Positions 22,971-48,960 of a stretch of 64,000 nucleotides of DNA are shown piece after piece. Position numbers and translations under genes: made by a program. Position 1 is the stretch's first letter. Every line of letters starts with the position of its first letter. The stretch spans positions 168,684 to 232,683 of IMG/VR virus record IMGVR_UViG_3300044638_006750. One strand, written 5' to 3'. The notes under the pieces are model-generated. The model did no database searches, was not told where the DNA came from, and saw only the letters and a list, made by a program, of their open reading frames with translations.

Positions 22971-23876
22971 TCATGGTGTAGGTTGGATGATTCCATACCC
23001 TTCATATTTTCTTATCCCTTTATGCCTAGTATTTTTTAATTGAATAGCTGTTTTTTTGAATAGCTCTATATAGTCTTCTTTAGTTGTCAGTTGATTACCA
23101 TAGTATGATTTAGCTAATGCTGCACACCCAACAGCAAATGGGTTGCTCATGCTCGTACCGCTCATTTTGGCATAAGTATTTCCTGGGTAGCAGCTTAATA
23201 TATCATGTCCTGGGGCAAGAAAATCTAGCTCGTCTCCGCTACAAGTAAAACTAGTTCTTTCAAAATTACTATCTATCGCCCCAATACTTATTGGATAGTC
23301 GTACTTAGCTGGATACAGTATTTCAGAACTCTCACCAGAGTTACCAGCTGCGCAGAATACAACAATATTTTTGCTTTTAGCAAAATCTATAGCTTTTTCT
23401 AGTCTTGGACTAGGAACAGGTGAACCTAGTGACATTGTAATAAAATCTGCCTTATTATCAATAGCCCAATATATACCTTTGATAATATCTTCATTGCTCC
23501 CCATACCACTATCGTTAAGGGCTTTTATTGGCATAATTTTTGCTTTTGGAGCAACACCAACCATGCCTAATCCATTGTCTGAAGCAGCTATAGTTCCTGC
23601 CACATGTGTTCCATGTCCACATTTATCTATGGGGTCTCTTGATGGCTCTACAAAGTTTACTCCTTGTACTAAGTTATGTTTAAGATCATCATGATCTAAA
23701 TCGCATCCAGTATCTATTACAGCAACAACTATACCATCTCCTTTAGAAAATTTCCAATGATTTTTTATTTTGAATGTTTCTATTTCCCATCCATAAAATT
23801 GGCTGTCTTCTGGTGATAAGCCATATACTGGCTCTACTTCATATGGTAATAATGAATAATTATTTTTTCTTTTCAT
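22971..23876 (-). CDS. Subtilisin-like S8 serine peptidase
   Basis: Catalytic triad motifs VIDTG, HGTHVAG and GTSMSNP; oxyanion AAGN. Confidence 0.93.
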   Translation of the reverse strand: MKRKNNYSLLPYEVEPVYGLSPEDSQFYGWEIETFKIKNHWKFSKGDGIVVAVIDTGCDLDHDDLKHNLVQGVNFVEPSRDPIDKCGHGTHVAGTIAASDNGLGMVGVAPKAKIMPIKALNDSGMGSNEDIIKGIYWAIDNKADFITMSLGSPVPSPRLEKAIDFAKSKNIVVFCAAGNSGESSEILYPAKYDYPISIGAIDSNFERTSFTCSGDELDFLAPGHDILSCYPGNTYAKMSGTSMSNPFAVGCAALAKSYYGNQLTTKEDYIELFKKTAIQLKNTRHKGIRKYEGYGIIQPTP

Positions 23877-24657
23877 GCTTTATAGTCTCTCTTATCCATT
23901 CTTTATATAAGCTTACTCTTGTGTGACAACTCTCATCATTGTATGTAGAATTAGAAGATCCATCATATCCTATAACTGATGAATTAATTCCAGCAAGCCT
24001 GTTATCTATAAAAAGACCACCCCCGCTGTCTCCACTACAAATTAAAAATTCTAGCTCTGTAGGCTTTTGATGCCTTTTAGATGGTGAACAGATCAGTACA
24101 TGTCTTTCTATTTTATCTATAAAGTTCGATCCTGCTCTTCTTAAGCCATCATGTTTTTTGGTGCCAGAATTAAATGTTCCCGTAAAACCCCAACCAGATA
24201 TAGAACATAATTTACCAATTTCATCATCTTCTTCATAAATAGATGGATAAAAATCTAAATCTATAGGATCTTCTATGTATCCTAAAGCTATATCAGCATA
24301 GCCAAAAACATTTGTATCATAATCTTTGTGCATAATCATATTTTTAATATTATATTTATTTTCGCCTATATTTACTGTCCAACTATGACAATTCTCAACA
24401 ACATGTGCAGCTGTTATAATCCAGTGAGGATCTATTACTACGGCAGATCCACAGGACATACCCTTGCCGTCAAAACAACATAATTTCACTACACTATGAA
24501 ACTTAGCTCCATAATCAATATATTTTTGATCTGAAGTATGAGGATCTATTGTTCCAGCAATAGAAAAAATTGATAAAAAATTCCATATGAATAAAGCATA
24601 AATATAAGATTTCATATACCGCTCCTTTTCACACCACTTTGTATATATTATATACAC
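23860..24657 (-). CDS. Trypsin-like S1 serine peptidase (exported)
   Basis: TAAHV, DIAL and GDSGGG; hydrophobic N-terminus from MKSYIYALFIW. Confidence 0.9.
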   Translation of the reverse strand: MYIIYTKWCEKERYMKSYIYALFIWNFLSIFSIAGTIDPHTSDQKYIDYGAKFHSVVKLCCFDGKGMSCGSAVVIDPHWIITAAHVVENCHSWTVNIGENKYNIKNMIMHKDYDTNVFGYADIALGYIEDPIDLDFYPSIYEEDDEIGKLCSISGWGFTGTFNSGTKKHDGLRRAGSNFIDKIERHVLICSPSKRHQKPTELEFLICSGDSGGGLFIDNRLAGINSSVIGYDGSSNSTYNDESCHTRVSLYKEWIRETIKHEKKK

Positions 24658-25015: not shown

Positions 25016-26017
25016 CTATAATACCTTAGCAGCTATTAAACATCCTTTAGCTACTGCGTGTAATGGATCATTAGCATGTCTTATTTCTTTTATCTCAACA
25101 GGAAATCCATTTTCTTGCATTTTTAATTTAAAATGTTCGATATATCCATCTGCTAACGATGTACCACCAGCAACCACTATGGTTAATGGATTTTTAAATT
25201 TTGGTAGTGATTTATGATTTATTAATGCAGAAGCTAAATTTTTAGTGGTATAGTCTATAAGTCTTTCATAATATGCTGATACAGCAGCCAACACTGGGTT
25301 GTCGCATGTTTCTCCTATTTTAAATCCACCACCTTCTTTTTCAACCTGTACTACACTATCTGGTTCTCCTGTGGCTACAGCACTCATTCTATCAATCCAG
25401 TCGCCGGATTTAGTTGTGGAAAACAAAACTGTTGGTTCGCCATTAAGCATTACACAAACATTAGTCATTCCCGCTCCACAACTAACCCCAATACCTGTAT
25501 AGTCTTCTGATTCTAATTCAGCATAACATAAGGCTTCTGCTTCATTGATAGCTCTAGCATTATAACCACATTCTGCTAAAATAGTTTTAACAACATCTTC
25601 ATGATATCCAACATCAAAATCGTCGTCTTCTTGATCAACTGGTTGTGCTGGGACACAGAATACCAGTTTTTCATTTTCTTCAGATGCTTTACCTGCTACT
25701 TCTTTTAAAATAAAAGCCAAGATTCTTTTTGCGTCTTTTTCTTTAGCCGAAACAACACCTCTATACATAGGTCTTTTAGCGGTATCATTTCTTTCAATAG
25801 CTTTTTCAATAGCATCTTTACCTAATAGAATAAAAGACCCATCTGAGTCTTTAATAAAAACTTTTCCAGTCAATCCTTTTTCTATCATTTTTGTAGCTAC
25901 TGGTGTTGTTGGTTTAATAACATAAAATGCATCTCTAAAATCTTTATATTGCATTTGATTATTATCGTCAGAAGATAATACTATATATGATGTTCCAACA
26001 TCTAAACCTTTAGCCAT
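25016..26017 (-). CDS. Actin-fold ATPase (MreB/MamK/ParM/FtsA superfamily)
   Basis: Phosphate-1 GLDVGTS, connect-1 NEAEA, phosphate-2 SCGAGMTN, adenosine AGGTS and connect-2 AVAKGC. Confidence 0.85.
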   Translation of the reverse strand: MAKGLDVGTSYIVLSSDDNNQMQYKDFRDAFYVIKPTTPVATKMIEKGLTGKVFIKDSDGSFILLGKDAIEKAIERNDTAKRPMYRGVVSAKEKDAKRILAFILKEVAGKASEENEKLVFCVPAQPVDQEDDDFDVGYHEDVVKTILAECGYNARAINEAEALCYAELESEDYTGIGVSCGAGMTNVCVMLNGEPTVLFSTTKSGDWIDRMSAVATGEPDSVVQVEKEGGGFKIGETCDNPVLAAVSAYYERLIDYTTKNLASALINHKSLPKFKNPLTIVVAGGTSLADGYIEHFKLKMQENGFPVEIKEIRHANDPLHAVAKGCLIAAKVL

Positions 26018-26405: not shown

Positions 26406-27305
26406 CTATGACTTATAGTTGCCAATAATACGACCTTTCTGTGTACGATGTACATACCCCATACGAATCAGAAAAGGTTCGATACTATTCTCTATGGTCT
26501 CTACTGCAATACCGGTTAATGAAGATATACTCTTTAGTCCAAGAGGATTAGCTCTATTTTTCTTTAGTAGATCTAGGTACATTCTGTCATATACGTCTAA
26601 ACCCATGCTATCAATTCCTTGATTTAAAAACACTTCATCTACATCGGGCTTAATACTTTTATGAAAGCTTGTATAACTCTTGTACCACATTAAACGAGCA
26701 TTAAGTATTCTAGGAGTACCCTTGCTACGTTTTGCTATCTCTAATAATTCATCATCAGATAATTCAAGTCCAAGCTTAACTGCATTCGATCTTGCTAGTT
26801 TAGCTAATTCATCATCATTATAAAAGGAAAGATGTTCTTTGATTTGAAACCTGTCATAAAATGGTTGACTAAGCCTTCCACCACAAGTTGTTGCTCCAAC
26901 CAAGGTAAAAAGAGGGAGTTCTATTAACTCTGGCTTGTTCTCTACTACGATACTAAGAACAAAATCTTCCATTACAGGATAAAGGAATTCTTCTACAACT
27001 TTTGGAAGTCTATGGATCTCATCAATAAACAAAACCGATCTTGGAGCAATACCCATTAGATACGGAAGTAAATTCTTTATACTTCTAACATTCGCCCCAT
27101 TGACCGTATACAGGTTTTCACCCATTTCTGACGCTATGGCACTAGCCACAGTGGTCTTGCCAAGCCCCGGAGGGCCGTCAATTAAAACATGAGGCATCGT
27201 AGAGCCTGTGCTTTTACAACCCGCCACAACGATGCGTAAACGATTTACAACCTCGTCTTGCCCAATGATATCCTCAAACTTAGAAGGGCGAACAATATTA
27301 GCCAT
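26406..27305 (-). CDS. ruvB: Holliday junction branch-migration helicase RuvB
   Basis: RPSKFEDIIGQ, GPPGLGKTT, LFIDEIHRL, GATT, GTPR and IEPFLI...RTQKGR. Start placed at the ATG after GGAGG. Confidence 0.92.
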   Translation of the reverse strand: MANIVRPSKFEDIIGQDEVVNRLRIVVAGCKSTGSTMPHVLIDGPPGLGKTTVASAIASEMGENLYTVNGANVRSIKNLLPYLMGIAPRSVLFIDEIHRLPKVVEEFLYPVMEDFVLSIVVENKPELIELPLFTLVGATTCGGRLSQPFYDRFQIKEHLSFYNDDELAKLARSNAVKLGLELSDDELLEIAKRSKGTPRILNARLMWYKSYTSFHKSIKPDVDEVFLNQGIDSMGLDVYDRMYLDLLKKNRANPLGLKSISSLTGIAVETIENSIEPFLIRMGYVHRTQKGRIIGNYKS

Positions 27306-27696
27306 TTTTACCTCCAATAGTAACCAAAATATTCTTAATTAGTGACGCCGTATCAGATGTTGGATTGCTTGCATGAGCTTCTGCTACTATAGTTTTAGCT
27401 TCTGAAGCTTTGAATCCATACCCAACTAGAATTTTAACACACTGACCCAGGTCGGCCAATGTCGTTTCTTTTACTACTTTTTGTGTGTTCGTCTTAGCTG
27501 ATTTTTTATCATATAGAATCTCTATATTGCTAATTCTTTTTGGTTTTAGCATAGTTTTACAATCACAAACTATAATAAAACCTTTGGTCTGGGATTCTGC
27601 CAGAGAAAGCCAATGTTCTACAGAACATACTGGACACGTATATTTACAGTGTACGTTTAGCTCAGTCGGTTTCAGGTTTTTGATTTTCTTGTTCAT
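27298..27696 (-). CDS. Zn-ribbon protein with a RuvA C-terminal (domain III)-like tail
   Basis: CPVC...CDC at the N-terminus; the C-terminal CVKILVGYGFKASEAKTIV...TASLIKNIL matches the RuvA-CTD pattern L..LGf...EA..........li+.al. Directly upstream of ruvB. Confidence 0.6.
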   Translation of the reverse strand: MNKKIKNLKPTELNVHCKYTCPVCSVEHWLSLAESQTKGFIIVCDCKTMLKPKRISNIEILYDKKSAKTNTQKVVKETTLADLGQCVKILVGYGFKASEAKTIVAEAHASNPTSDTASLIKNILVTIGGKNG

Positions 27697-28099
27697 CGTT
27701 ATCTTTTATCCAAAATACAAAGTCATTAAGATCAGGATCATACGAACTATCTATAATGTCTTTCTTTACCAAAGTGTGTAGTATATTACTTACCATTCTG
27801 CTGTTAAAAGATTCTATCATTTCCATGAACTTTTTGTCATTAATTAAATATCTAACTTTATCAGATGTTTTACTTTTTTGTATCTTAACTAAGGATTTTG
27901 CAATTACTAAACATTCTTGTTGAGTAAGGACTTCATTTAACTCTGATACCTCATCTTCCGATAGGTCAGACATTAACATACTGAGTTCATCACTTGTCTT
28001 TTCAGATGTAGTACTAAAATTATCAAATACTAAAATTCTAGTACTTTCAACTAATTTATCTAAATCTTCAACTATAAACCATTCTGTATTTTTTCCCAT
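27662..28099 (-). CDS. Hypothetical protein
   Basis: ORF tiles in the operon. Confidence 0.6.
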   Translation of the reverse strand: MGKNTEWFIVEDLDKLVESTRILVFDNFSTTSEKTSDELSMLMSDLSEDEVSELNEVLTQQECLVIAKSLVKIQKSKTSDKVRYLINDKKFMEMIESFNSRMVSNILHTLVKKDIIDSSYDPDLNDFVFWIKDNDEQENQKPETD

Positions 28100-28114: not shown

Positions 28115-28525
28115 TTAATTTAGTATATCAAACATTCCTTTGTAGTAATGTGGCTGATTGATAAAATGCACAGCGTGTGACTGTATATGATTTTTATATC
28201 CTATATCAATAGGATCCAAAACAAAATACTTTTTTTTCCAAATTGGAGAACCTTGATAGTTATTCCCCAAATACTGGAAGGAATTACCCTTACCAGTATT
28301 GGAGAAGTAACTATTCACAGGAAACGACTTTTTTGGAAAACCAGAAATATTAGGTATAGTATACCATACATTTGGTGAAGATTCAACTATATCATTCAAA
28401 GCATCTTGTAGCCATTTACTCCAAGCATCCCATGCTGTTGGATCAAACTTGAAGTAATGCTTGTATGGATCTTTAGCATTATCATAGTCATGCTCATCAT
28501 CATTATAGTCATAATCTTCATGCAT
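28115..28525 (-). CDS. Hypothetical protein with an acidic N-terminus
   Basis: ORF tiles in the operon; AGGA upstream. Confidence 0.55.
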   Translation of the reverse strand: MHEDYDYNDDEHDYDNAKDPYKHYFKFDPTAWDAWSKWLQDALNDIVESSPNVWYTIPNISGFPKKSFPVNSYFSNTGKGNSFQYLGNNYQGSPIWKKKYFVLDPIDIGYKNHIQSHAVHFINQPHYYKGMFDILN

Positions 28526-28529
28526 AGTA

Positions 28530-29672
28530 TTATCCTATACAAAACTTGTCACTAATTTGAGAAGCTAGGTCTTTAGCAGCACTGGAGAGGAACCTGTTGT
28601 TACTAAAGTACAAAGGAGTTGATACTTGATTAAGGAACTCCACTACCGTTTTTAAAAGTTTGGTCTGCTGACCATCAAGGTTTATATCTTCGTCAGGCAG
28701 AGCATCCTCCGTATCATCAGACCTATCCTCGTTTATGGGCATCACCGGCATGGGTTCTCCATAGGCACGCTCATATTCAAGGTTATTAATATAAGACGTA
28801 CTATTACAAGCATAGTCATTTTGAAGACTGTTAAGAATTTGTTTCGCAACATTCATTGGTACTGGAACTCCGTTTTCGTCTGACTGCTTATAAGCCTTGG
28901 CGTACCCCTTGTACCATTCATCGCTACACTTTTCAGGAATAATCTGTAGAGTAGCAGGTTGACCAGTAAGGGCTGACTTTAGATCAGCAACATTAATTGG
29001 TTGACCAGTGCTACCGGGAAGGATGCTGGTAAAATAAGGAGCTTTCTTTTCCCACTCCTTACGCCACCAAGTATAAGGAACACGATAAATCTGATTAGGT
29101 TTGATAGCCCTTGGATCGCCATCAAAGTAGTTTACGAGCTTTTTCTGTAGACCATTCCAGAAAGTTTTGTTTGCCCCAACAATATTGCGTGAAGCATCAT
29201 CAAAGATCCAATAACACTGATATCCATTACGAGTATCTATAACCCAACTTGGCTTTACGGGAAACTCATTGATTTTCTTCAGAAACCTCTTCTTGTGCTG
29301 CATAACAATGCTTGGCTTAAAATAAGTACCATCAGCATTTCTGCCAGCGTCCATATCGCAAAAACAACAAGTAAATTGCTTGATAGCATAAAGCTTACGT
29401 CCACCATTAACATAGAAGTAAGCATCAGAGTGCTTATCGACATTTGCTTCTAGCATCTCGTTAAGATCATTGGTATGATTCATACTACTAATCTTCTTGC
29501 GAGGATTTCCATTGTACACAAAGATATGGTTTTGTTTGAAAGAGTTCAAGAAGCAATCTCGTTCATTACGATAATGACCACTATTTAGATTCTTATCAAA
29601 GGGATTAAAACCAAGAACATCACTAAAACTGTTGTTATTCATCTTTTCCACCATTACGTTTCCTGTAATCAT
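28530..29672 (-). CDS. RepB-like primase / primase-polymerase (AEP fold)
   Basis: FCDMDAG (DxD), DTRNGYQCYW (motif II, normally containing His) and GDP....NQIYRVPYT. Confidence 0.65.
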   Translation of the reverse strand: MITGNVMVEKMNNNSFSDVLGFNPFDKNLNSGHYRNERDCFLNSFKQNHIFVYNGNPRKKISSMNHTNDLNEMLEANVDKHSDAYFYVNGGRKLYAIKQFTCCFCDMDAGRNADGTYFKPSIVMQHKKRFLKKINEFPVKPSWVIDTRNGYQCYWIFDDASRNIVGANKTFWNGLQKKLVNYFDGDPRAIKPNQIYRVPYTWWRKEWEKKAPYFTSILPGSTGQPINVADLKSALTGQPATLQIIPEKCSDEWYKGYAKAYKQSDENGVPVPMNVAKQILNSLQNDYACNSTSYINNLEYERAYGEPMPVMPINEDRSDDTEDALPDEDINLDGQQTKLLKTVVEFLNQVSTPLYFSNNRFLSSAAKDLASQISDKFCIG

Positions 29673-29806: not shown

Positions 29807-30661
29807 TCAGTTATAATACTCCGCATCGGGATCATAATCTTCATCTTCATCGTCAAACTGATCCCAGTAACTTTCATCATAGTCATTTAGATATTCATCG
29901 TCATCGTCGTTGTAATCATCCTCGTCAAAATCACTCTTATAGAGAGGCTTGAGAAGCTCTCCTTGATATTCGCCAACAACCTCATAACGACAAGTACGAA
30001 GTTTCTCGCAATTGCAATCTGTAGGAACGCTGACTACATCCTTGGGATTAATCTTGACGATTACAATCTTATCTCCAGCATCTAGACTACCATAACTAGC
30101 AACATAGTTAAGTGCGCCTGCATGAAGACCATTTGAACAACCTCGACCACGATCATCATCAACTTTTGCCCTAGTCATTTCACAAATATCACCAACCTTG
30201 TTACGGAATTTACCGGCATACTTATCCATATAGTCTCCACGTACTGCCTTATACGCAAGAAAATAACCATCTTCTGTAATTGGCAAATACTGATGCTCCA
30301 AGAAATCATACAGTTCCTTCTGACTTTGCATACTTGGATTTTCCATAAGATTATTTAGGAAATTTACAAGAGGCTCAAAAGGCAATCCCTTACTCATAAA
30401 CTCCAAAATACGCTTACTGATAGCACCGTGAACTTCTTCTCCTTCATAATAGACCTTGCCATTCTTGATCTCGACAAGACCCTGACTAAAGGAAGCAACA
30501 GCTTTTTGAATATCGACAAGCTCAGTCAACTCATCTTCTGTAGCCGATGAAAGCTTCTCCATAATCAGCCTATAGTTAATATGATCCGGCAAAACCTGAT
30601 GAGCCTTATTGTTAAGGATTAGTGTCAGATTTCCATCAACCCACATAAAAGGAACGCTCAT
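29807..30661 (-). CDS. rIIB: rIIB-like protein
   Basis: ITEDGYFLAYKAV, VDDD....CSNGLHAG and KINPKDVVSVPTD...KLRTCRYEV. Confidence 0.88.
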   Translation of the reverse strand: MSVPFMWVDGNLTLILNNKAHQVLPDHINYRLIMEKLSSATEDELTELVDIQKAVASFSQGLVEIKNGKVYYEGEEVHGAISKRILEFMSKGLPFEPLVNFLNNLMENPSMQSQKELYDFLEHQYLPITEDGYFLAYKAVRGDYMDKYAGKFRNKVGDICEMTRAKVDDDRGRGCSNGLHAGALNYVASYGSLDAGDKIVIVKINPKDVVSVPTDCNCEKLRTCRYEVVGEYQGELLKPLYKSDFDEDDYNDDDDEYLNDYDESYWDQFDDEDEDYDPDAEYYN

Positions 30662-30684
30662 AATCTTTCTCCTGTGAAATTAAA

Positions 30685-33330
30685 TCAAACAATTGTCTTA
30701 CTTACCAGTTTTCTGAATGACTCCGTATCATTCATTTTATAGCTCCAACTATTAGGACCATGATAGTATGTGCTTCTAAATGCTGACAACGGATTATCAT
30801 TAGTAAGTTCTCTCAAGTTGCCGTTGACCTCATGGCTACACACAATATACTTCAACATCGGCTGGTTGTCAAGAGCCTCTTTAATCTGCTTTCGCAACTC
30901 ATCGATTTTTATCAATTTATCTTTCAAAGATCCGTCTGGCTTAATAGCCTTCTGGATAGATGTATCATCCGAATAGAGTTCCTTAACCCACCTATTTAGG
31001 TGAAGATAAGCAACATTAGCATCACGAATTTCATTACTATTGATCCCATTGATGCCGATCTTATTAAGAATCTTAGTCATATGGGCAAAGTAATCAGATT
31101 GCTTAAATTTGGCAATATCAAACTTGTTTCTGTGAATGGTATCTGCAAAGAACTCCATGATCATACAATGATCGACCAAATCTACAATCTTGGTATCGGA
31201 AATACTAGAAGCATAATCCAGACCAAAGATATTCAGTATGTGCCAGAGAAACTGCCTATCGGTATAGTTTCTATTATAGTACGAATCTCTATTCTCTTGT
31301 TTATTAAACTCTTCCTTGGCATACTCAACAAGACCATTATAGACAGAAACATCCTTGAATTTATTTGCATAAACCGATTCCAGTTTAGACTTCATAAAAT
31401 CATTAAAATTAATTAGGTTGTATCCTTCTTTGATCAACTTTTGAGCATAGCTTTCCTTAATAGCATAGATATTAGTATCTCCATATAGACTCTTAATGAG
31501 ATCTTTACAAGACTCATCTTTGGTCATTCTGCTGATATCTCTAACAGCAGGATAACCTTGTACAGAACCATATCTTAGAATTGGCACATACACAATATCT
31601 TCTTCGTCAAGAACACTATCTCGCTCATCTTGATCAGTAATTTCTCTCATATAATGAGAGTCGTTCATAGTACCAGACAGAGCCTTGGCACTCGACAGAC
31701 TACCATGAATCAGAAAGATATTATCAACACTAACACTGCCAGCGGGATCACGACTACCAGTTTTGCGTGGGCCGTTACTAAGCAGACTCTTATACTGTGA
31801 TACCAATACTACATTAGATTCTCCACCAATATCCTTGATGATATCGTCAAAACCTTCTGTAGAATCTTCTGGAGTATCGCTATCAATCATTAAATAAGCA
31901 AAGCAGTTATTTTGATTACAGTATTTAGTAACAATTTTCTTTGCTGTTTCAGCACCCTTAACATCAGATCGGAAAAATACCATCTTCCCAGTTTTACGAT
32001 TGGCATTATCCCAATAATAAGAACCTCTTCCGCTAAGAGTTTCATGATGAATTTTATCTGTGAGATAAATCATCCTACGACTACGATATCCAGCAGTTCT
32101 AAAATTGAACACATAAAACTGCTTACTCTTCTTAAACTTGTATTCAAGATCCTTACCGCTTTGAAGATCATAAACCTTACCATTACTATCAGTCCATGAT
32201 GCCCCAGCAGTCCATCCTCCTGCAATATCACTAAGATTATAGTAGGTGGTATATGCTTCAACCAGACTATTAGCATTAGCAAGTTTGTCTGTCATATCTT
32301 GATTGAGTTGCAAATAAATATCTTGTGTACGTTCACGCAGGGTTTTAATAACTTGCTTAGTGTATTGCAAACCCTCACGACTAACATCCATCTCCAATTC
32401 ACCAATGCCAAATTGGATCTCCAAATAAAGACCTTGGTTGAGAATCTCACGCACAAGATTCTTCCAGTTGTCTACGTCGGCCTTACGAAAAGCCCTGTTC
32501 CATGCTTGAATATGATCCGGTTGATCTGGCTTTTCTTCTCCGACAATCTTATTAGCATCAACAGGATAAGCAATATTACCCATAATTGCAACAATACCAC
32601 TACTGATATTATTATGGTTACTTGGATACTTACTACTATCACTAGCGATTCTTCCGATCTTCCAACCAGTACCTTCAATCACAATATTGTTATGAGAATA
32701 TGATCCGTCATTGATAGAGTTACAAACACCACCCTCAATAATTGGCTTTAGCTTAAAATAATGATAAATCCTCTTGCTTTTCTGAGTAAATTCCCAATGG
32801 TCATTTTGTTTAACCGCAAAAGTAATTTCAAGACCATTTGGTTCATTGGTTTTTGTAATACTAACAAGATTCAAACTCGGAACTCCATTCTCATCCATCG
32901 CTGCAATATATGTCAGTTTTTGTCCATCATAATAAGAGATAGTAGTAAAACTCTTAGTATAGGCAAAGGGACTCTTAGAACCTAGACCAAGACAACCAAC
33001 AAAATCATTGCTAGTATTTTTATTACTCGCACCATAAGTAGTATACAGTTCCTCCATATCTGCTTGACTAAGACCAGTACCATAGTCACGCACAGTAAAA
33101 GAAGGATTGGCCTGTGTAGGCAGAATCACCTTAAAAGGATTCTTGTTTCCCGCTGCAATATGAGCATCATATGCATTAGTAGACAACTCACGCACAACAG
33201 CCATAACCTTGTCGGAATAAAGAGAGTCCGACAAAATCTTAAACATTTTGCTTGTCTGTGCGATGCTGAATTGATTAGCACTCTGAACACCAGACGAATG
33301 GATTTCAACTGTCCTATCTGCCAACTTCAT
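30685..33330 (-). CDS. rIIA: rIIA-like protein (N-terminal GHKL/HATPase domain)
   Basis: LSDSLYSDK..AVVRELSTNAYDA, VRDYGTG and GCLGLGSKSPFAYT; upstream of rIIB. Confidence 0.88.
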   Translation of the reverse strand: MKLADRTVEIHSSGVQSANQFSIAQTSKMFKILSDSLYSDKVMAVVRELSTNAYDAHIAAGNKNPFKVILPTQANPSFTVRDYGTGLSQADMEELYTTYGASNKNTSNDFVGCLGLGSKSPFAYTKSFTTISYYDGQKLTYIAAMDENGVPSLNLVSITKTNEPNGLEITFAVKQNDHWEFTQKSKRIYHYFKLKPIIEGGVCNSINDGSYSHNNIVIEGTGWKIGRIASDSSKYPSNHNNISSGIVAIMGNIAYPVDANKIVGEEKPDQPDHIQAWNRAFRKADVDNWKNLVREILNQGLYLEIQFGIGELEMDVSREGLQYTKQVIKTLRERTQDIYLQLNQDMTDKLANANSLVEAYTTYYNLSDIAGGWTAGASWTDSNGKVYDLQSGKDLEYKFKKSKQFYVFNFRTAGYRSRRMIYLTDKIHHETLSGRGSYYWDNANRKTGKMVFFRSDVKGAETAKKIVTKYCNQNNCFAYLMIDSDTPEDSTEGFDDIIKDIGGESNVVLVSQYKSLLSNGPRKTGSRDPAGSVSVDNIFLIHGSLSSAKALSGTMNDSHYMREITDQDERDSVLDEEDIVYVPILRYGSVQGYPAVRDISRMTKDESCKDLIKSLYGDTNIYAIKESYAQKLIKEGYNLINFNDFMKSKLESVYANKFKDVSVYNGLVEYAKEEFNKQENRDSYYNRNYTDRQFLWHILNIFGLDYASSISDTKIVDLVDHCMIMEFFADTIHRNKFDIAKFKQSDYFAHMTKILNKIGINGINSNEIRDANVAYLHLNRWVKELYSDDTSIQKAIKPDGSLKDKLIKIDELRKQIKEALDNQPMLKYIVCSHEVNGNLRELTNDNPLSAFRSTYYHGPNSWSYKMNDTESFRKLVSKTIV

Positions 33331-39793: not shown

Positions 39794-40045
39794 TCAATCC
39801 ATTAGGTCTGGATAAAAATTTTCTATTCTACTATCCTCTATTTGTTTAGCAATGCTTGCTATAAGCTCTTCTATAGATTTTGCTTTTGTTGTATGCCAAA
39901 CATTTTGAGCTTGGTGTTGAGCCTTTACCTCTCCTATCCAATATTCTTTTTCTTTTCTAATGAAGAGACCTTTTTTGCCAATGATATCATCCAAATTCGG
40001 AGGGAATTGCTCTATTGTTTCTAATAATTTTTCGATTTCTCGCAT
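39794..40045 (-). CDS. Hypothetical protein
   Basis: ORF between island genes. Confidence 0.5.
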   Translation of the reverse strand: MREIEKLLETIEQFPPNLDDIIGKKGLFIRKEKEYWIGEVKAQHQAQNVWHTTKAKSIEELIASIAKQIEDSRIENFYPDLMD

Positions 40046-40051
40046 AATATT

Positions 40052-41206
40052 TTACTCCTTATGATTGACTATAAAAAAACTTTGATATACTTCTTTTTGA
40101 GTTAACCTAAATCTGATACCATAATTTGTAGTAAATTCTTCAACAGCCTGACAAACACCCGGAAATCTTTCTCTCATATAGTCATGTCCACAGATAAGAC
40201 CGTTATTTTTAACAACTCTTCTAGCTGCATTAAGTTCTTGTATGCATTGTTCGTATGTGTGAACAGTATCTATATATACAAAATCTAAAGTATTATCTTC
40301 TAAGGAATTTAAAAATCCAACAGAATCTTGTTTTACTACATGAATATTTTCATTATTAATAAATCTTTGTTTAACGTGATCAAATAAAATACTCCCATCT
40401 TGATATATTTTTTCTTTAGTCCCATGAATAACACCACTAAAAGTATCTACTAAATATAGTTTTTTGAATTTTTTAGTATCTATTAGGACTTTAGAAAAAT
40501 CTCCCTCAAAAACACCTAGCTCACAACCAACAATATCTTCTGGTAAGACACTCTTTATTTGATGTCTATAATCTATAAACCAGTATTTATCTACTGCATT
40601 TTGTCTATTTTGAAAATGGTTTGGTTGTTTCCATAGTGCAAAATCATCTGGTAATTCTAGTATTTGATCTTTTAATAAATGAGGAACAATCAATTTTTGA
40701 TTATATTTTTTTTCTAAAGTGGCACATAGTTGTATGTCATCTTCTAAATCATCAATAATAATATTTTTTAAATTTTTTTGTTTAGTGAATATAAATCTAC
40801 CAAGTAGAAAATCTACCGCTGTATCTTCATCTACATTAGTGATCCATCCCCAGTTTTTATAGGGCAAATATTTATGGATTTTTTTGCCAAAACCACCCAC
40901 AGCGATACAATCAGAGTTGTTATCTAACAACTTAATTAGTTCATTAAAAATTTCTATATCTTTAAATATTAAATCATCATCTAAAGAACACACAAAATCT
41001 GTCTGTGCTTGTTGTAACATCCACCATCTAGGAGGACATTTGCTATTGATGGATGATGTAATTTGCCAATCGATCCTAGAATCTTTGGGCCAGACTCCAC
41101 TATTATCCCATAGAAAAATTTTTACTTTTCCATATAAAAAATCGAGTATTTTGTTTAAATTATCTGGTCTTCGCCAATTCAACAAGCCTACTGTTAAATT
41201 TATCAT
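40052..41206 (-). CDS. GT-A glycosyltransferase fused to a class I methyltransferase
   Basis: LLNWRR, LWDN and SLDDD (GT); ELGVFEG, VYIDTVHTY and GHDY (MTase). Confidence 0.8.
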   Translation of the reverse strand: MINLTVGLLNWRRPDNLNKILDFLYGKVKIFLWDNSGVWPKDSRIDWQITSSINSKCPPRWWMLQQAQTDFVCSLDDDLIFKDIEIFNELIKLLDNNSDCIAVGGFGKKIHKYLPYKNWGWITNVDEDTAVDFLLGRFIFTKQKNLKNIIIDDLEDDIQLCATLEKKYNQKLIVPHLLKDQILELPDDFALWKQPNHFQNRQNAVDKYWFIDYRHQIKSVLPEDIVGCELGVFEGDFSKVLIDTKKFKKLYLVDTFSGVIHGTKEKIYQDGSILFDHVKQRFINNENIHVVKQDSVGFLNSLEDNTLDFVYIDTVHTYEQCIQELNAARRVVKNNGLICGHDYMRERFPGVCQAVEEFTTNYGIRFRLTQKEVYQSFFIVNHKE

Positions 41207-43058
41207 ACTTAAGTTTTTTCCTTTTTAATAAATTAGAATAGTATTGTAAAATTAATTCATTTGATGAGTATGAGTTTTTAGTTAAATGCACAAAAAGAAC
41301 AGGACTATCATCTTCTATAGTATACCATTTTTTATGATCACGATATGTGTGTATTACATTAGAATTCCATGGTGCGATATTACAGCCTTTATTTTGTGAT
41401 ATTTTAACTATATTATTATATTCTAAAGCCATAATATCTAAATATTTTTGATCATCAAATAACCCAGCTTGAAAATTTTTTTCACATTTCCACTCTACTG
41501 CTTTTTTCCACCAATTAATTGCAGGCAATCCCTGTTTGGAAGAACCAACAAATCCCGCATTAAAAAAACCATCAGTAAAATTTAGAGCATATTGATACCC
41601 TTCAGGAATTAATGACCTATGGTGTTTAGTTAATAATACTCCGTCTATATCATCAAAAAGAAAATTCCAATAGTTAATAAATAATATGTCACAATCTATA
41701 TATATAACTTTATCATATGATTGTAAAAAGTATTCAATTAAAACAGGTTTAAGATACCATCTTATAATGTCGTTATTTGATTTATATTTATCTGGTATGA
41801 GCCTATTAATTGCTTCTGGTAAAGACTGGAAAGATATTTTATTAAATTGAAACTCTTGAAATTGTTCATCTATAATAACGCTTTTATAATCGGAATATTT
41901 ATTATATTTCATTGCATTTTTTAAACATATTAAAGCTTCTTTTTTATAATTTCTATCAACAATAGTAAATAATAGTGTTTTGGTATTGGAACTGAATGGG
42001 TTGGAGATTAATAACCTCTCCTGTTCTTTATAATGGTCAAACCCTATTTTTTGTCTTTCTAACATTTTAAATTTCTCTATATCTAAAGTATCACCAAACC
42101 ATTTATAATGATTAGTAATAAAAGTTTGATAGAAAAATTTTATATATTGAGCATTATACACTGAGTGATGTCCTGCTAGAATATCTATTTTATAGTGCAT
42201 CAGTATGCATTTCGCTGAATCTGCCAACATTATATCTTTAGTAATATTTTTTTTAATAGGAAATTGCCTAATAATAGGCTGATATCTTTCTATATTTTTA
42301 GGTATGTCATAAGACATACTAATTCTATCTAATAATACTGAACGAACAAAATAAGAACCTGTTTTTATACATTCATCTCTTAATTTTTTAAAAGATTGAT
42401 ATGGGGATATATCATGAAATTCATCTAGATCAGCCACAACATACCAACATTTTGTTTGTGATTTAATATTGTTGATTCTTATAGAATCATTTGTACCATT
42501 ATGTCCTATCGGACTAGACATTGAACCATCATTATAGACAATAAACTTTAATTTATTTAATATTATTATATCTAGATTAAGAGATAAGACATATAATTTA
42601 ACAGATTCATCGCATATAAAAATAATATTATCTATATCTAAATTAGTATAGTGTTCTAAAAAATGAGGTAATAAATCTTTATATCTATTTGATTTTGAAT
42701 AAATATTACAAATTAAAATTATATCATTCGATACTACATCTGGAGAAGAATTATAATATTGTTCAGGATTGGTCGATGCTAATTTATCTTGATAGTTTTT
42801 AAAAAATTTTGAATTTGATTGACCGTATTTCATCCAATGAAAATATAATCTTTGTTTATCTGATATTCCTTGATCTGAACAGTAAGGCTGATAAAAATCT
42901 ATACATTCAGGATATTCTGATTGATAAAAAATTTCATCGAAACTAGAATCTAATATATTACTCTTATAAAAATCTTCTATCATAATAATTATCTTAATTT
43001 TTCCAGTAGGCTGGGGTTTAGTTTCATAAAATTTGAGCGAATATATTCTGGGCCACAA
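41160..43058 (-). CDS. Dual glycosyltransferase (GT2-like + GT8-like) with an N-terminal FDE.FY module
   Basis: HFLEHY..L and VADLDEF; YIDCDI, FNAGFVG, DDQKYLD and NIAPWN. True start is probably about 42983. Confidence 0.8.
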   Translation of the reverse strand: MWPRIYSLKFYETKPQPTGKIKIIIMIEDFYKSNILDSSFDEIFYQSEYPECIDFYQPYCSDQGISDKQRLYFHWMKYGQSNSKFFKNYQDKLASTNPEQYYNSSPDVVSNDIILICNIYSKSNRYKDLLPHFLEHYTNLDIDNIIFICDESVKLYVLSLNLDIIILNKLKFIVYNDGSMSSPIGHNGTNDSIRINNIKSQTKCWYVVADLDEFHDISPYQSFKKLRDECIKTGSYFVRSVLLDRISMSYDIPKNIERYQPIIRQFPIKKNITKDIMLADSAKCILMHYKIDILAGHHSVYNAQYIKFFYQTFITNHYKWFGDTLDIEKFKMLERQKIGFDHYKEQERLLISNPFSSNTKTLLFTIVDRNYKKEALICLKNAMKYNKYSDYKSVIIDEQFQEFQFNKISFQSLPEAINRLIPDKYKSNNDIIRWYLKPVLIEYFLQSYDKVIYIDCDILFINYWNFLFDDIDGVLLTKHHRSLIPEGYQYALNFTDGFFNAGFVGSSKQGLPAINWWKKAVEWKCEKNFQAGLFDDQKYLDIMALEYNNIVKISQNKGCNIAPWNSNVIHTYRDHKKWYTIEDDSPVLFVHLTKNSYSSNELILQYYSNLLKRKKLKYDKFNSRLVELAKTR

Positions 43059-44254
43059 CCATTTCTTTTTGTTTTATTTTGAACTTTTATATCTATAACT
43101 TTACATAAATTTTCTATAGAAATAGAACCATCGAATTCAAAATATATATCCTCAATTATTTTTTGTTTATGATCTGTATATATATTATTTTTAAATGTTA
43201 TTACCTTATTATTAATATATAAATTTTCTAATACAACATATGGACAAGGATCCTCTTCTGAAAATAATATAAAATAATCTATGGCTTTATAATAAATATA
43301 AGGAAGACTAACTTCTGGTATATGATATATATTATGCATTGATGGAAAATAGTTTGCGGTCCCGCCTATCCATAAAAAATTATATTGAGGGTATATTTTG
43401 GAGATTTCGATAAATAGATTGGGATTTTTTCTATTTTCGGTTTGTCCGCACATACCTATAGTTATTTTAGAATGATTTAAGTATCCATAGCTATTAATAA
43501 TAGCTGGAATATTTTTTTTGGATTCTGAATCTATTAAACTTAAAGTATCATCTAAAAATATTGGTTGCTGTATTTCTGGTCTATAATTATGTTTTATATA
43601 AAACTGGTTTTGTATTCTATCAGATACAACATATGTTGGCAGAATACCATATCTTCCGTATGCGTGTTCTGGTTCATGACTATGTATAATAATATTATTG
43701 TAATGATTATATAGTTTAATAAATTGCACAAAACAAATATTTATACCATTAATATAAAAAATCTTTGGCTGTAATTTTTCATATATATAACATAATAATA
43801 ATAAATTTTGTTTATATGAAATAATATCATTATTATTTATTTTGTATTTATTATATAAATTTACATTATATTGCGCATCTAAAATACAAACTTTATATCC
43901 TTGATTTTGTAAATATTTATATAGACTGAATAGGTGGTGGCTGGCTCCATATAGATTAGACACACTATTTACTAAAATTATACTATTTTTATGTTGTTCA
44001 TATTGATTAATAACTTTAAATAAAGACTGATTAATATTATAGATATACTTATTAACATTTAAAGTTGACGATACTTCGTCTTTAGGAAGACTATAATTCA
44101 TATAATGAAAATATAATCTATGTTTATCATCTATATTATTATGTTTACAATAAGGCTGATAAAAATCTTTTGTTTCCGGATATCTTGCAGCATAAAAATG
44201 CTCATCGAAGTCCATATCTATTTTATTGTTTTTGTAAAATTCAAGAATATCCAT
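42989..44254 (-). CDS. GT4-like glycosyltransferase with an N-terminal FDE.FY module
   Basis: YGASHHL, HSHE, GQTENRKNP, FLWIG and SEEDPCPYVVLE. Confidence 0.8.
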   Translation of the reverse strand: MDILEFYKNNKIDMDFDEHFYAARYPETKDFYQPYCKHNNIDDKHRLYFHYMNYSLPKDEVSSTLNVNKYIYNINQSLFKVINQYEQHKNSIILVNSVSNLYGASHHLFSLYKYLQNQGYKVCILDAQYNVNLYNKYKINNNDIISYKQNLLLLCYIYEKLQPKIFYINGINICFVQFIKLYNHYNNIIIHSHEPEHAYGRYGILPTYVVSDRIQNQFYIKHNYRPEIQQPIFLDDTLSLIDSESKKNIPAIINSYGYLNHSKITIGMCGQTENRKNPNLFIEISKIYPQYNFLWIGGTANYFPSMHNIYHIPEVSLPYIYYKAIDYFILFSEEDPCPYVVLENLYINNKVITFKNNIYTDHKQKIIEDIYFEFDGSISIENLCKVIDIKVQNKTKRNGCGPEYIRSNFMKLNPSLLEKLR

Positions 44255-44465
44255 TACTGCAAAACATTTTTAAGATTAATCTGAAATATTGTTTGATTTA
44301 GTTCTATTAGTTCTTTATTTTTTGTAGGTAGTATACTATATAGATTCGTATCTAAACAATAGAAAAAAAGTTATCTATGCCTAGTCGATCAAACTCCGTA
44401 ATTCTATCTAAACATTGTCCTAGATACTTAGTATTAGCAAAAATTACTATCCTATAGTTTGACAT
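44254..44465 (-). pseudogene. Frameshifted small ORF (GT77/nucleotide-diphospho-sugar transferase N-terminus-like)
   Basis: The ATG at 44465 lies 3 nt after the upstream stop and the TAA overlaps the next ATG (TAATG). The span is 212 nt; one extra T in the T7 run (44363-44369) gives a 70-aa ORF YRIVIFANTKY...GIDNFFFYCLD. Confidence 0.5.
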
Positions 44466-46800: not shown

Positions 46801-47009
46801 GTATCGTCTATTCGTTTGCGTTTCTTGAACACAATAGCCAATGACTGCACCAAATCACTTCCTGCCGTTTGAAATATACACGGTAAAATAGCATGTATAA
46901 TTAAACAGAGACCGGCTAGAATACAAACTACACCATGAAAAGTAGCAAATTTAAAATGCTGATAATAAGTCATATTATTTTCTTGTATATGTTTTTTTAT
47001 ACTATTCAT
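46797..47009 (-). CDS. Small membrane protein (DUF6356-like)
   Basis: KHIQENNMTYYQHFKFA...IIHAILPCIF. Confidence 0.55.
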   Translation of the reverse strand: MNSIKKHIQENNMTYYQHFKFATFHGVVCILAGLCLIIHAILPCIFQTAGSDLVQSLAIVFKKRKRIDDT

Positions 47010-47349
47010 ATCTTTTGGGTCTCGATAAAAAGTAATTCATAGCGTTAACTACGGATTGAAAGTTGTCTCCGAGCTTGCCTATCCCAGTATTACATGGTTC
47101 ACATAGCCATCCTCTAAAGCTATTATCTTCATGATCGTGGTCTAAGCACCATTTGTATGGTATTTTTCCGCAACACTCACAGACTTCTGGTTTTGGTGGT
47201 GCCTTTTTGTGTAATTTGTTTCTCACCTTCGATTGTTTTTTTACACATTTTCTACATCTGCTATCTAGATTGTCTTTGTACATACTATGTTTGGGAAAAC
47301 TAGCTTTATTTTTTCTTTTACCGCAGTACGAACAAATTTTTCTAGTCAT
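47002..47349 (-). CDS. Endonuclease VII-like protein
   Basis: CECCG...LDHDH....RGWLC..CNTGIG..GD; N-terminal Zn finger. Confidence 0.85.
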   Translation of the reverse strand: MTRKICSYCGKRKNKASFPKHSMYKDNLDSRCRKCVKKQSKVRNKLHKKAPPKPEVCECCGKIPYKWCLDHDHEDNSFRGWLCEPCNTGIGKLGDNFQSVVNAMNYFLSRPKRYE

Positions 47350-48593: not shown

Positions 48594-48608
48594 ATAATAT
48601 GCTTTAAG

Positions 48609-48960
48609 TGGAGGCGAGGGGAGTCGAACCCCTGTCCTATCAGTAGTTCATTATATCTTCTACAAGTTTAGGTTGTTCATAAGTTTTATGAAAGATTAAA
48701 GAACAAACAACATTCATCTTTCCGTACCAACTAATCTCAGGCTAGAACCCGTTGGCAATTCTAGCAGCCGAAGGCTTTTACGACGATTTTTTGGACGCTA
48801 CCTTCATTGCTTCCTAAAATCGTTACTGCTTTTTATTAAGCAGCAAGTGCTAACTGATTTGCGCCAGTTAAAGCGTTTAATCTGGTTTTATAGTAGCCAC
48901 CAGATCAACTACTACTTGCCAATATAAATCTGCTATTGTAGTCGAAACCTTTACGCCCCC
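48609..48960 (-). ncRNA. ssrA: tmRNA, tag peptide (A)GANQLALAA
   Basis: 5' GGGGGCGTAAAGGTTTCGAC; 3' GGGGTTCGACTCCCCTCGCCTCCA; G3-U pair; tag ORF 48865-48833 after TTTAACT, ending TAA TAA; CCA not encoded. Confidence 0.95.

What the first reader, a model, noticed from the sequence alone, without database searches (positions are those of the whole stretch)
26406..27696. RuvB partnered by a Zn-ribbon/RuvA-domain-III chimera instead of RuvA
The gene just upstream of ruvB has only the RuvB-binding C-terminal helix bundle of RuvA. Its N-terminal Zn ribbon replaces the OB and HhH junction-binding domains. This suggests an adaptor that loads RuvB on a non-canonical substrate or partner, with endonuclease VII (47002-47349) as a possible resolvase. 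The phage RuvB is also short at the C-terminus.
Basis: partly seen in the sequence, partly recalled or inferred. Interest (0 to 1): 0.62.

Follow-up and report, generated by a model that had tools for sequence, protein, structure and literature searches.

The report
Phage RuvB with a zinc-ribbon adaptor
A 233-kb phage encodes a complete RuvB DNA-branch-migration motor, and in place of RuvA a small protein that keeps only RuvA's RuvB-docking domain, joined by a flexible linker to a basic zinc ribbon; this gene pair recurs across a large clade of uncultured jumbo phages.

Summary
On the minus strand, a 132-aa gene (27298-27696) overlaps a ruvB gene (26406-27305) by 8 nt.

RuvB has all three RuvB domains and passes one NCBIfam RuvB equivalog cut-off.

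The 132-aa protein has three parts:
- a C4 zinc ribbon, strongly basic;
- a disordered linker of variable length;
- a three-helix bundle whose best matches by sequence profile, Foldseek and an independent structural search are all RuvA domain III, ahead of generic UBA folds.

A controlled complex prediction scored 0.62, against 0.01 for the best control. [quoted passage not shown] The contacts use residues that align with E. coli RuvA L167 and L170.

The pair is adjacent in 72 of 80 related IMG/VR loci. The family has at least 274 clusters at 50% identity. The genome has no RuvA_N, HhH or RuvC, but it does have a RecA-like gene, two endonuclease VII genes and a DNA ligase.

Caveats:
- The adaptor was lost at least 4 times while RuvB and its docking surface were kept.
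- The role of the zinc ribbon is inferred only.
- The "short C-terminus" of RuvB is trivial.

I rate this a new variant of the RuvAB system, interest about 0.6.

The parts
26406..27305 (-). Phage ruvB (299 aa from ATG 27305; the ORF listing gives an alternative TTG at 27317). It has an AAA+ large domain with Walker A/B, a presensor-1 beta-hairpin 4 residues shorter than in E. coli, a lid domain, and a winged-helix head with R291/K294/R296.
   Evidence: Pfam RuvB_N 2.7e-46, AAA_lid_4, RuvB_C 1e-18. NF000868 298 bits > 282; TIGR00635 276.8 < 299. Aligns to E. coli RuvB residues 22-319. Invariant motifs in alignment A3.
27298..27318 (-). Junction between the two genes. GGAGG (27311-27315) lies 5 nt before the ruvB ATG (27303-27305). 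The ATG overlaps the adaptor's TAA stop (27298-27300) in the 8-nt string ATGGCTAA, an arrangement typical of translational coupling.
   Evidence: Sequence read directly. Overlaps or near-abutment recur in the 72 related loci that have the adaptor.
27307..27462 (-). Adaptor residues 79-130: a three-helix bundle homologous to RuvA domain III. It has invariant L90, Y93, G94 and E99; L90 and Y93 align with E. coli RuvA L167 and L170. This is the predicted RuvB-docking face.
27463..27510 (-). Adaptor residues 63-78: a disordered linker of low conservation and variable length (12-61 aa across the family). It is analogous to the flexible domain II-III linker of RuvA.
   Evidence: pLDDT ~41. Mean pairwise identity 17.5%, against 48% for the N domain and 37% for the C domain. 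Length range.
27511..27669 (-). Adaptor residues 10-62: a C4 zinc ribbon (C21, C24, C44, C46 invariant), strongly basic (family mean net charge +6.9). Its role as a DNA or partner anchor is inferred.
   Evidence: Alignment invariants. pLDDT ~90 with beta-hairpin knuckles. Charge. Only generic zinc-ribbon neighbours were found.
27662..28099 (-). Conserved 145-aa gene overlapping the adaptor's start by 35 nt. It is present in all 80 related loci, including those without the adaptor. Its fold has no clear relative, and it is not RuvA domain I/II. Membership of the module is inferred from synteny only.
28115..28525 (-). Conserved 136-aa gene of the same co-oriented block, function unknown, present in 79 of 80 loci.
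28530..29672 (-). 380-aa gene resembling RepB/PriCT-type primases by language-model features only. It suggests that the block is a replication/recombination module.
   Evidence: Atlas feature scores 0.92-0.95 to clusters carrying RepB_primase/PriCT. No Pfam hit.
47002..47349 (-). Endonuclease VII family gene, a candidate junction resolvase. It is linked to ruvB only by being in the same genome.
   Evidence: Pfam Endonuclease_7 1e-11. A second, better-scoring copy lies at genome 1075-1332.

Best explanation
The 132-aa protein is a minimal, phage-specific stand-in for RuvA.

Its C-terminal three-helix bundle is a true homologue of RuvA domain III. [quoted passage not shown] In bacterial RuvAB, domain III bound at this site acts as nucleotide-exchange factor and fulcrum for the RuvB hexamer.

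A flexible linker joins the bundle to a very basic C4 zinc ribbon. The ribbon takes the place of the junction-binding OB and HhH domains of RuvA, and most likely anchors the complex on phage DNA.

The two proteins are made together from overlapping genes. Together they would drive branch migration or fork remodelling during recombination-dependent replication and repair of the 233-kb phage genome. They would act alongside the phage's RecA-like recombinase, endonuclease VII-family nucleases and DNA ligase.

Shown here: domain III homology, a canonical predicted interface, conserved gene pairing, and absence of RuvA and RuvC from the genome.

Inferred: DNA binding by the zinc ribbon, activation of RuvB, branch migration, and the pathway.
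For: Homology of the C-terminal bundle to RuvA domain III:
- The family profile's best PDB hits are RuvA D3 (1ixs_A, E 5.7e-4), followed by further RuvAs.
- 7 of 21 family members hit Pfam RuvA_C on their own.
- TIGR00084 matches profile positions 145-201 only.
- hhalign against three RuvA D3 sequences gives P 1e-4.
- The top 17 Foldseek hits are all RuvA D3, rmsd 1.0-1.3 A, 25-32% identity.
- A search independent of Foldseek gives Z 8.9/8.2/7.4/7.3/6.5 for RuvA D3, against 5-6 for UBA/CUE.

Docking on RuvB:
- Complex prediction scored 0.62, best of 3 controls 0.01. That mark was reached by 58 of 80 solved complexes and 2 of 110 mismatched pairs. The runs agreed in at least 84% of contacts, and partner pLDDT was at least 78.
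- The interface is RuvB 78-89 and 121-132. The second stretch is equivalent to the E. coli hairpin L135-L152 (PMC2628435). This matches the alpha3 plus presensor-1 hairpin site described in PMC9477746.
- Adaptor contacts include L90 and Y93. These are invariant in the family and align with RuvA L167 and L170. L167A and L170A abolish RuvB function in E. coli (PMC2628435).

Gene pairing and spread:
- There is an 8-nt start/stop overlap with a GGAGG upstream.
- The adaptor abuts ruvB in 72 of 80 loci.
- The same order is seen in contigs found through the adaptor itself.
- The architecture is uniform in the best 150 of 534 cluster representatives.

Other support:
- N-domain mean net charge is +6.9 and the linker is variable.
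- The genome has no RuvA_N, RuvA_C (Pfam) or RuvC.
- The genome has a RecA-like gene, two endonuclease VII genes and a ligase.
Against: - All sequence scores for domain III are modest for a 50-residue domain: Pfam 18 bits (below the gathering score of 24), Foldseek E 0.1-0.3, hhalign probability 57%.
- The complex score could come from the model's memory of solved RuvA-D3/RuvB complexes. My own alignments were used, so the calibration holds only roughly.
- The adaptor is missing from 8 of 80 loci and from three complete genomes. The RuvB tree needs at least 4 losses. The RuvB docking residues stay conserved in those genomes. RuvB can therefore persist without the adaptor, perhaps by using host RuvA.
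- Nothing tests DNA binding or oligomerisation of the zinc ribbon. Its structural neighbours are generic zinc ribbons.
Confidence: 0.55

Rival explanations
1. The adaptor tethers RuvB to a protein rather than to DNA. The zinc ribbon would bind another phage or host factor, such as the conserved 145-aa or 136-aa neighbours, the primase-like protein, SSB or the replisome. RuvB would then be delivered to stalled forks or replication intermediates as part of a larger machine.
For: - The 136-aa, 145-aa and adaptor genes and ruvB form a fixed co-oriented block in 72 of 80 loci.
- A primase-like gene lies just upstream.
- Zinc ribbons often mediate protein contacts.
- The N domain is the best conserved part of the adaptor (48% mean identity).
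Against: - A mean net charge of +6.9 on about 66 residues fits nucleic-acid binding better.
- The 145-aa protein is acidic, has no recognisable fold, and persists where the adaptor is lost.
- No interaction was tested.
Confidence: 0.2
2. The protein is a regulator or decoy rather than a loader. A free domain III would compete with host RuvA. It would either keep phage RuvB away from host RuvA-junction complexes or occupy host RuvB and disable host RuvAB. Real junction targeting would come from host RuvA.
For: - The adaptor has been lost repeatedly while RuvB was retained.
- The docking surface of RuvB is just as conserved in genomes without the adaptor.
- Cross-species RuvA/RuvB complementation is established (PMC9477746), so host RuvA could serve phage RuvB.
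Against: - Tight translational coupling with the phage's own ruvB and a strictly conserved two-domain architecture with a basic N domain suggest a stoichiometric working partner rather than a simple competitor.
- A decoy would not need a conserved zinc ribbon.
- The host is unknown, so binding to host RuvB could not be modelled.
Confidence: 0.15
3. There is no functional link. The C-terminal bundle would be a generic UBA-like three-helix fold that resembles RuvA D3 by chance, and the gene would merely sit next to ruvB.
For: - Every single sequence score is weak (Pfam below threshold; Foldseek E above 0.1).
- Three-helix bundles are common, with many Z 5-6 hits.
Against: - Three independent searches all rank RuvA D3 first, with 23-32% identity, ahead of UBA/CUE domains.
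- The residues invariant in the family coincide with the RuvB-contact residues of RuvA.
- The controlled complex model passes.
- Adjacency holds in 72 of 80 loci across RuvB divergence down to about 70% identity, while the adaptor itself has diverged to roughly 40%.
Confidence: 0.05

Closest known systems
Bacterial RuvA-RuvB branch migration complex (E. coli, T. thermophilus, S. thermophilus; PDB 1IXR/1IXS, 7PBL and related entries)
   Same: - A RuvB AAA+ motor with all three domains.
- A partner gene immediately upstream.
- The partner ends in a domain III three-helix bundle on a flexible linker.
- The bundle is predicted to dock on RuvB helix alpha3 plus the presensor-1 hairpin.
- The hydrophobic contact residues equivalent to RuvA L167 and L170 are conserved.
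   Different: - The partner has no OB-fold domain I and no HhH domain II. These parts build the RuvA tetramer and recognise the four-way junction.
- A roughly 55-residue basic C4 zinc ribbon stands in their place.
- The partner is 132 aa, against about 200 for RuvA.
- RuvB is trimmed at both termini and its hairpin tip is 4 residues shorter.
- No RuvC is encoded.
- The system belongs to a phage.
Isolated RuvA domain III fragment used in biochemistry and cryo-EM (1IXS, 7X7P)
   Same: A domain III without the junction-binding core still binds RuvB. PMC9477746, citing earlier work, says it regulates branch migration and raises RuvB's ATPase activity. The phage protein is a natural case of domain III separated from domains I and II.
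   Different: The laboratory fragment has no targeting module. The phage protein carries a conserved zinc ribbon and is a stable, widespread natural gene.
T4-type recombination-dependent replication toolkit (UvsX recombinase, UvsW branch-migration helicase, endonuclease VII)
   Same: - A large virulent-type phage with rIIA/rIIB.
- A RecA-like recombinase, endonuclease VII family nucleases and its own ligase.
- It would need a branch-migration activity.
   Different: The candidate motor here is a bacterial-type RuvB AAA+ hexamer with a domain III adaptor, not an SF2 helicase of the UvsW type. A review of 224 cultured jumbo phages states that their RuvC is not coupled to a RuvB-like ATPase (PMC7824862).

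Membership tests
RuvB (Holliday junction branch migration ATPase) | AAA+ large domain with Walker A, Walker B, sensor 1 and arginine finger (Pfam RuvB_N) | tested here: met
   RuvB_N 2.7e-46 over profile positions 1-159. GPPGLGKTT, DEIH, GATT and DRF are invariant in A3.
RuvB (Holliday junction branch migration ATPase) | Presensor-1 beta-hairpin that binds RuvA domain III | tested here: met
   It is present at residues 121-134 and aligns to E. coli L135-L152 with a 4-residue deletion at the tip. It forms part of the predicted interface.
RuvB (Holliday junction branch migration ATPase) | Lid (small ATPase) domain and C-terminal winged-helix head with DNA-contacting basic hairpin | tested here: met
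   AAA_lid_4 4e-8 and RuvB_C 1e-18. R291, K294 and R296 are invariant; by motif (RTQKGR here, RTPRGR in E. coli RuvB) they appear to correspond to P. aeruginosa R314/R317/R319, though Pa RuvB was not aligned residue by residue.
RuvB (Holliday junction branch migration ATPase) | Curated equivalog score thresholds | tested here: inconclusive
   NF000868 scores 298.1 against a cut-off of 282 (pass). TIGR00635 scores 276.8 against 299.05 (just below).
RuvB (Holliday junction branch migration ATPase) | ATP-dependent branch migration of Holliday junctions | not testable with these tools
   This needs biochemistry.
RuvA | Domain I OB fold (Pfam RuvA_N) | tested here: not met
   The 132-aa protein and its 21 homologues have no hit. 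The whole genome in six frames has none either. The model shows a zinc ribbon instead.
RuvA | Domain II with two helix-hairpin-helix motifs | tested here: not met
   No HhH family appears among the Pfam hits at E <= 1. The model has no helical domain between the ribbon and the bundle.
RuvA | Domain III three-helix bundle that binds RuvB (Pfam RuvA_C) | tested here: met
   - The single-sequence Pfam score is below the cut-off (18 vs 24 bits).
- The family profile hits RuvA D3 in the PDB at E 5.7e-4.
- Structure: Z 8.9, rmsd 1.0-1.5 A.
- Contact residues are conserved.
- The interface model passes its controls.
RuvA | Full-length equivalog score (TIGR00084) | tested here: not met
   19.5 bits against a cut-off of 85. 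Only profile positions 145-201 are matched.
RuvA | Tetramer that binds four-way junctions | not testable with these tools
The oligomeric state and DNA binding of the zinc ribbon are unknown.

The most novel reading that the evidence does not exclude
This clade of jumbo phages runs a self-contained RuvB machine that needs no RuvA. A monomeric or loosely oligomeric zinc-ribbon anchor would replace the junction-specific RuvA tetramer. The motor would then be aimed at DNA structures other than classical Holliday junctions, such as reversed or stalled forks, D-loops or protein roadblocks on the phage chromosome. It would also show that domain III plus any DNA anchor is enough to supply the fulcrum and nucleotide-exchange function for RuvB.
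Probability: 0.3. Interest if true: 0.75.

Novelty: new variant of a known kind. Interest (0 to 1): 0.6.

Why it matters
RuvB is known as the partner of RuvA. The current mechanism (Wald et al. 2022) has RuvA domain III acting as exchange factor and fulcrum because it is held by the junction-bound RuvA core.

This phage protein is a natural separation of functions: domain III is kept and the whole junction-binding core is swapped for a zinc ribbon. It is widespread, with at least 274 clusters at 50% identity, and was not found described in the literature searched.

It offers a small, tractable system to ask two questions:
- What does domain III need to be attached to in order to drive RuvB?
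- Which DNA structures does a RuvB motor act on in phage replication?

It also adds a bacterial-type branch-migration motor to the recombination toolkit of large phages. The jumbo-phage survey read here notes no coupling of RuvC to a RuvB-like ATPase.

Tried and rejected
1. The conserved 145-aa gene just upstream as a split-off RuvA domain I/II. Rejected: the confident model (pLDDT 82) has no OB or HhH match. The best Foldseek E is 0.13 with rmsd above 10 A, and the best VIA Z is 5.0.

2. Rosetta-stone fusions of the adaptor to RuvB or to other domains. None were found: the best 150 of 534 representatives are all 80-184 aa with the same two domains.

3. The adaptor in known phage genomes. tblastn against 50,697 phage records gave no match. 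BFVD structures gave nothing informative. PHROGs gave none.

4. RuvB hits in the 'phages' collection. All are at or below 41% identity. The three examined are bacterial-type genes in host-like flanks, two of them with a canonical ruvA next door. They are not relatives of this system.

5. Relaxed RuvB docking residues in genomes that lost the adaptor. Not seen: the interface is equally conserved.

6. A diverged adaptor or a lone domain III elsewhere in the adaptor-less complete genomes. None at E <= 10.

7. Function of the zinc ribbon from structural neighbours. Only generic ribbons turned up: eS27, MJ0042-type, DUF1922 and SprT-like.

8. Expression evidence from public sequencing runs.

9. Literature search for a prior description. 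Terms combined RuvA, domain III and zinc ribbon, or RuvB with jumbo phage or phage genome. Nothing was found.

Full report
**What is there.** The window is the last 64 kb of a 232,683-bp IMG/VR virus record that CheckV rates as complete. At the finding's coordinates two minus-strand genes overlap.

The downstream gene (26406-27317 as listed) is a RuvB:
- Pfam RuvB_N 2.7e-46, AAA_lid_4 4e-8, RuvB_C 1e-18.
- NCBIfam NF000868 scores 298 bits against a cut-off of 282. TIGR00635 falls just short, at 276.8 against 299.

Reading the junction directly shows GGAGG five bases before an ATG at 27305. That ATG overlaps the upstream gene's TAA stop in the eight bases ATGGCTAA. The real RuvB is therefore very likely 299 aa, as gene callers also chose (P0022), and the two genes are arranged for coupled translation.

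**The RuvB.** Against E. coli RuvB the alignment runs from residue 22 to residue 319 of 336. The phage protein lacks about 18 N-terminal and 11 C-terminal tail residues, and 4 residues at the tip of the presensor-1 hairpin. Walker A/B, sensor and arginine-finger motifs and the basic hairpin of the winged-helix head (R291, K294, R296) are invariant among relatives. By motif, these three match the residues shown to be essential in P. aeruginosa RuvB.

**The upstream protein.** The 132-aa product has 21 word-search homologues. Their alignment (A1) shows invariant C21, C24, C44 and C46 (CPxC...CxC), a poorly conserved middle, and a C-terminal block with invariant L90, Y93, G94, E99 and K121.

The AlphaFold2 model has three parts:
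- a zinc ribbon (residues ~10-60, pLDDT ~90);
- a disordered linker (63-78);
- three helices (79-130, pLDDT 70-80).

No member hits RuvA_N or any HhH family.

**Is the bundle RuvA domain III or a generic UBA fold?** Each single score is modest for a 50-residue domain, but every approach picks RuvA:
- Pfam RuvA_C scores 18 bits for the window protein, below the gathering score of 24. Seven of 21 members hit it on their own.
- TIGR00084 matches only its last 57 positions.
- The family profile searched against all PDB sequences finds T. thermophilus RuvA domain III first (1ixs_A, E 5.7e-4), then other RuvAs.
- hhalign against three RuvA domain III sequences gives P 1e-4 over 44 columns.
- The first 17 Foldseek rows are all RuvA domain III from four species, rmsd 1.0-1.3 A over 43-49 residues at 25-32% identity.
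- A search that does not use Foldseek ranks RuvA domain III first (Z 8.9, 8.2, 7.4, 7.3, 6.5). UBA, CUE and EF-Ts domains score Z 5-6 at lower identity.

**Does it dock on RuvB?** The one controlled complex job used the RuvB alignment A3 and the bundle alignment A2. It scored 0.62, against 0.01 for the best of three controls. That mark was reached by 58 of 80 solved complexes and 2 of 110 mismatched pairs. The runs agreed in at least 84% of contacts, and partner pLDDT was at least 78.

The contacts on RuvB are residues 78-89 and 121-132. With the +14 offset, the second stretch lies in the E. coli hairpin L135-L152, which binds RuvA (PMC2628435). Together the two stretches match the "helix alpha3 plus presensor-1 beta-hairpin" composite site seen by cryo-EM (PMC9477746).

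On the adaptor, the contacts include L90 and Y93. These align with E. coli RuvA L167 and L170, whose alanine mutants abolish RuvB function in vivo.

The tool warns that such a pass can reflect memory of solved RuvA-D3/RuvB complexes. It therefore shows likeness of the interface, not binding.

**How general is the pairing?**
- Contigs found through the adaptor carry rIIA, rIIB, two small genes, the adaptor and ruvB in the same order.
- RuvB relatives at 70-100% identity are very numerous: more than 7,900 clusters at 90% identity, and 508 confirmed IMG/VR stretches.
- In the 80 best loci, 72 have a gene with the cysteine pattern and the YGF motif abutting or overlapping ruvB.
- Across 53 distinct adaptors the ribbon is 48% identical on average, the bundle 37% and the linker 17.5%. 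Linker length ranges from 12 to 61 residues.
- An exhaustive profile search finds 534 cluster representatives at E <= 1e-3, and 274 at E <= 1e-10. The best 150 are all 80-184 aa with both domains and no fusions.

**An important caveat.** Eight of the 80 loci lack the adaptor. There, ruvB follows the 145-aa gene directly. Three complete genomes of this kind have no match to the full family profile or to the bundle alone.

On a RuvB tree these cases need at least four separate changes. Their RuvB docking residues are as conserved as in the others. The adaptor can therefore be lost while RuvB and its domain-III-binding surface are kept. This leaves room for host RuvA to serve the phage motor, since cross-species RuvA/RuvB complementation is established.

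**Genomic setting.**
- The phage genome has no RuvA_N, no Pfam-level RuvA_C and no RuvC in six-frame searches whose controls worked.
- It has a RecA-like gene.
- It has two endonuclease VII family genes. The one outside the window scores better (68.8 against 46 bits).
- It has an ATP-dependent ligase.
- The genes upstream of the pair are conserved too. The 145-aa protein folds confidently but resembles nothing solved, and is not an OB/HhH protein. The 380-aa protein resembles RepB/PriCT primases by language-model features only.

**Interpretation.** The best-supported reading is a RuvAB-like machine in which the junction-binding core of RuvA has been replaced by a basic zinc ribbon. The ribbon's family mean net charge is +6.9, against -1.1 for the bundle.

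Domain III would dock on RuvB and act as exchange factor and fulcrum, as in bacteria. The ribbon would provide the anchor, most likely on DNA. The first step is supported by homology and modelling. The anchoring step, and the role in recombination-dependent replication, are inferences.

The rivals are a protein-tether role for the ribbon, a decoy or regulator role in competition with host RuvA, and chance resemblance (now unlikely).

**Novelty.** No description was found in the open literature searched. A comparative review of 224 jumbo phages states that their RuvC is not coupled to a RuvB-like ATPase. The adaptor has no match in 50,697 phage records or in PHROGs. One ESM Atlas cluster of related viral hypothetical proteins carries an automatic RuvA_C label in half its members, so databases hold a trace of the domain but no interpretation of it. 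I class it as a new variant of a known system.

Noticed in passing
window 48606-48960 (-): A full-length tmRNA gene (Rfam RF00023, 119.6 bits; ARAGORN tag peptide GANQLALAA) is carried by the phage. It might help to identify the host.
   Followed up: partly
window 25016-26017 (-): An actin-fold protein matches Pfam Volactin end to end (1.9e-63), two genes downstream of ruvB. The same family recurs next to ruvB in related contigs (L001, L003, L004). A phage-encoded volactin-like cytoskeletal protein is unusual.
   Followed up: partly
window 27662-28099 (-) and 28115-28525 (-): Two small genes (145 aa and 136 aa) lie upstream of the adaptor/ruvB pair in 80 and 79 of 80 related loci. The 145-aa protein gives a confident model (pLDDT 82, pTM 0.71) with no convincing structural relative (best Z 5.0).
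   Followed up: partly
window 28530-29672 (-): A 380-aa protein has no Pfam hit, but its language-model features resemble RepB_primase/PriCT clusters (0.92-0.95). It is possibly an archaeo-eukaryotic-type primase.
   Followed up: partly
   Followed up: no
window 47346-48593 (-): A 415-aa protein matches DUF1501 over its full length (1.7e-101), directly upstream of the endonuclease VII gene and next to the tmRNA. This is an odd gene for a phage.
   Followed up: no
window 22971-24657 (-): A subtilase S8 (1.1e-55) lies next to an ORF (23860-24657) with trypsin-type sequence motifs, not scanned against Pfam here. Related contigs L001 and L003 carry a Trypsin-family gene near the volactin gene, and L002 and L004 a Peptidase_S8 gene.
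   Followed up: no
window 29807-33330 (-): An rIIB (PHROG 609, 2.5e-72) and rIIA-like (881 aa, HATPase_c_3) gene pair lies immediately upstream of the replication/recombination block. Gene order is conserved in relatives.
   Followed up: partly
window 40000-44300: A low-GC stretch (0.24-0.28, against about 0.33 elsewhere) carries glycosyltransferase- and methyltransferase-like genes. It may be a horizontally acquired surface-modification island.
   Followed up: no
L013, L019, L021, L051, L056, L057, L069, L081: These related phage loci keep ruvB but have cleanly lost the adaptor gene. On the RuvB tree this needs at least four independent events.
   Followed up: yes
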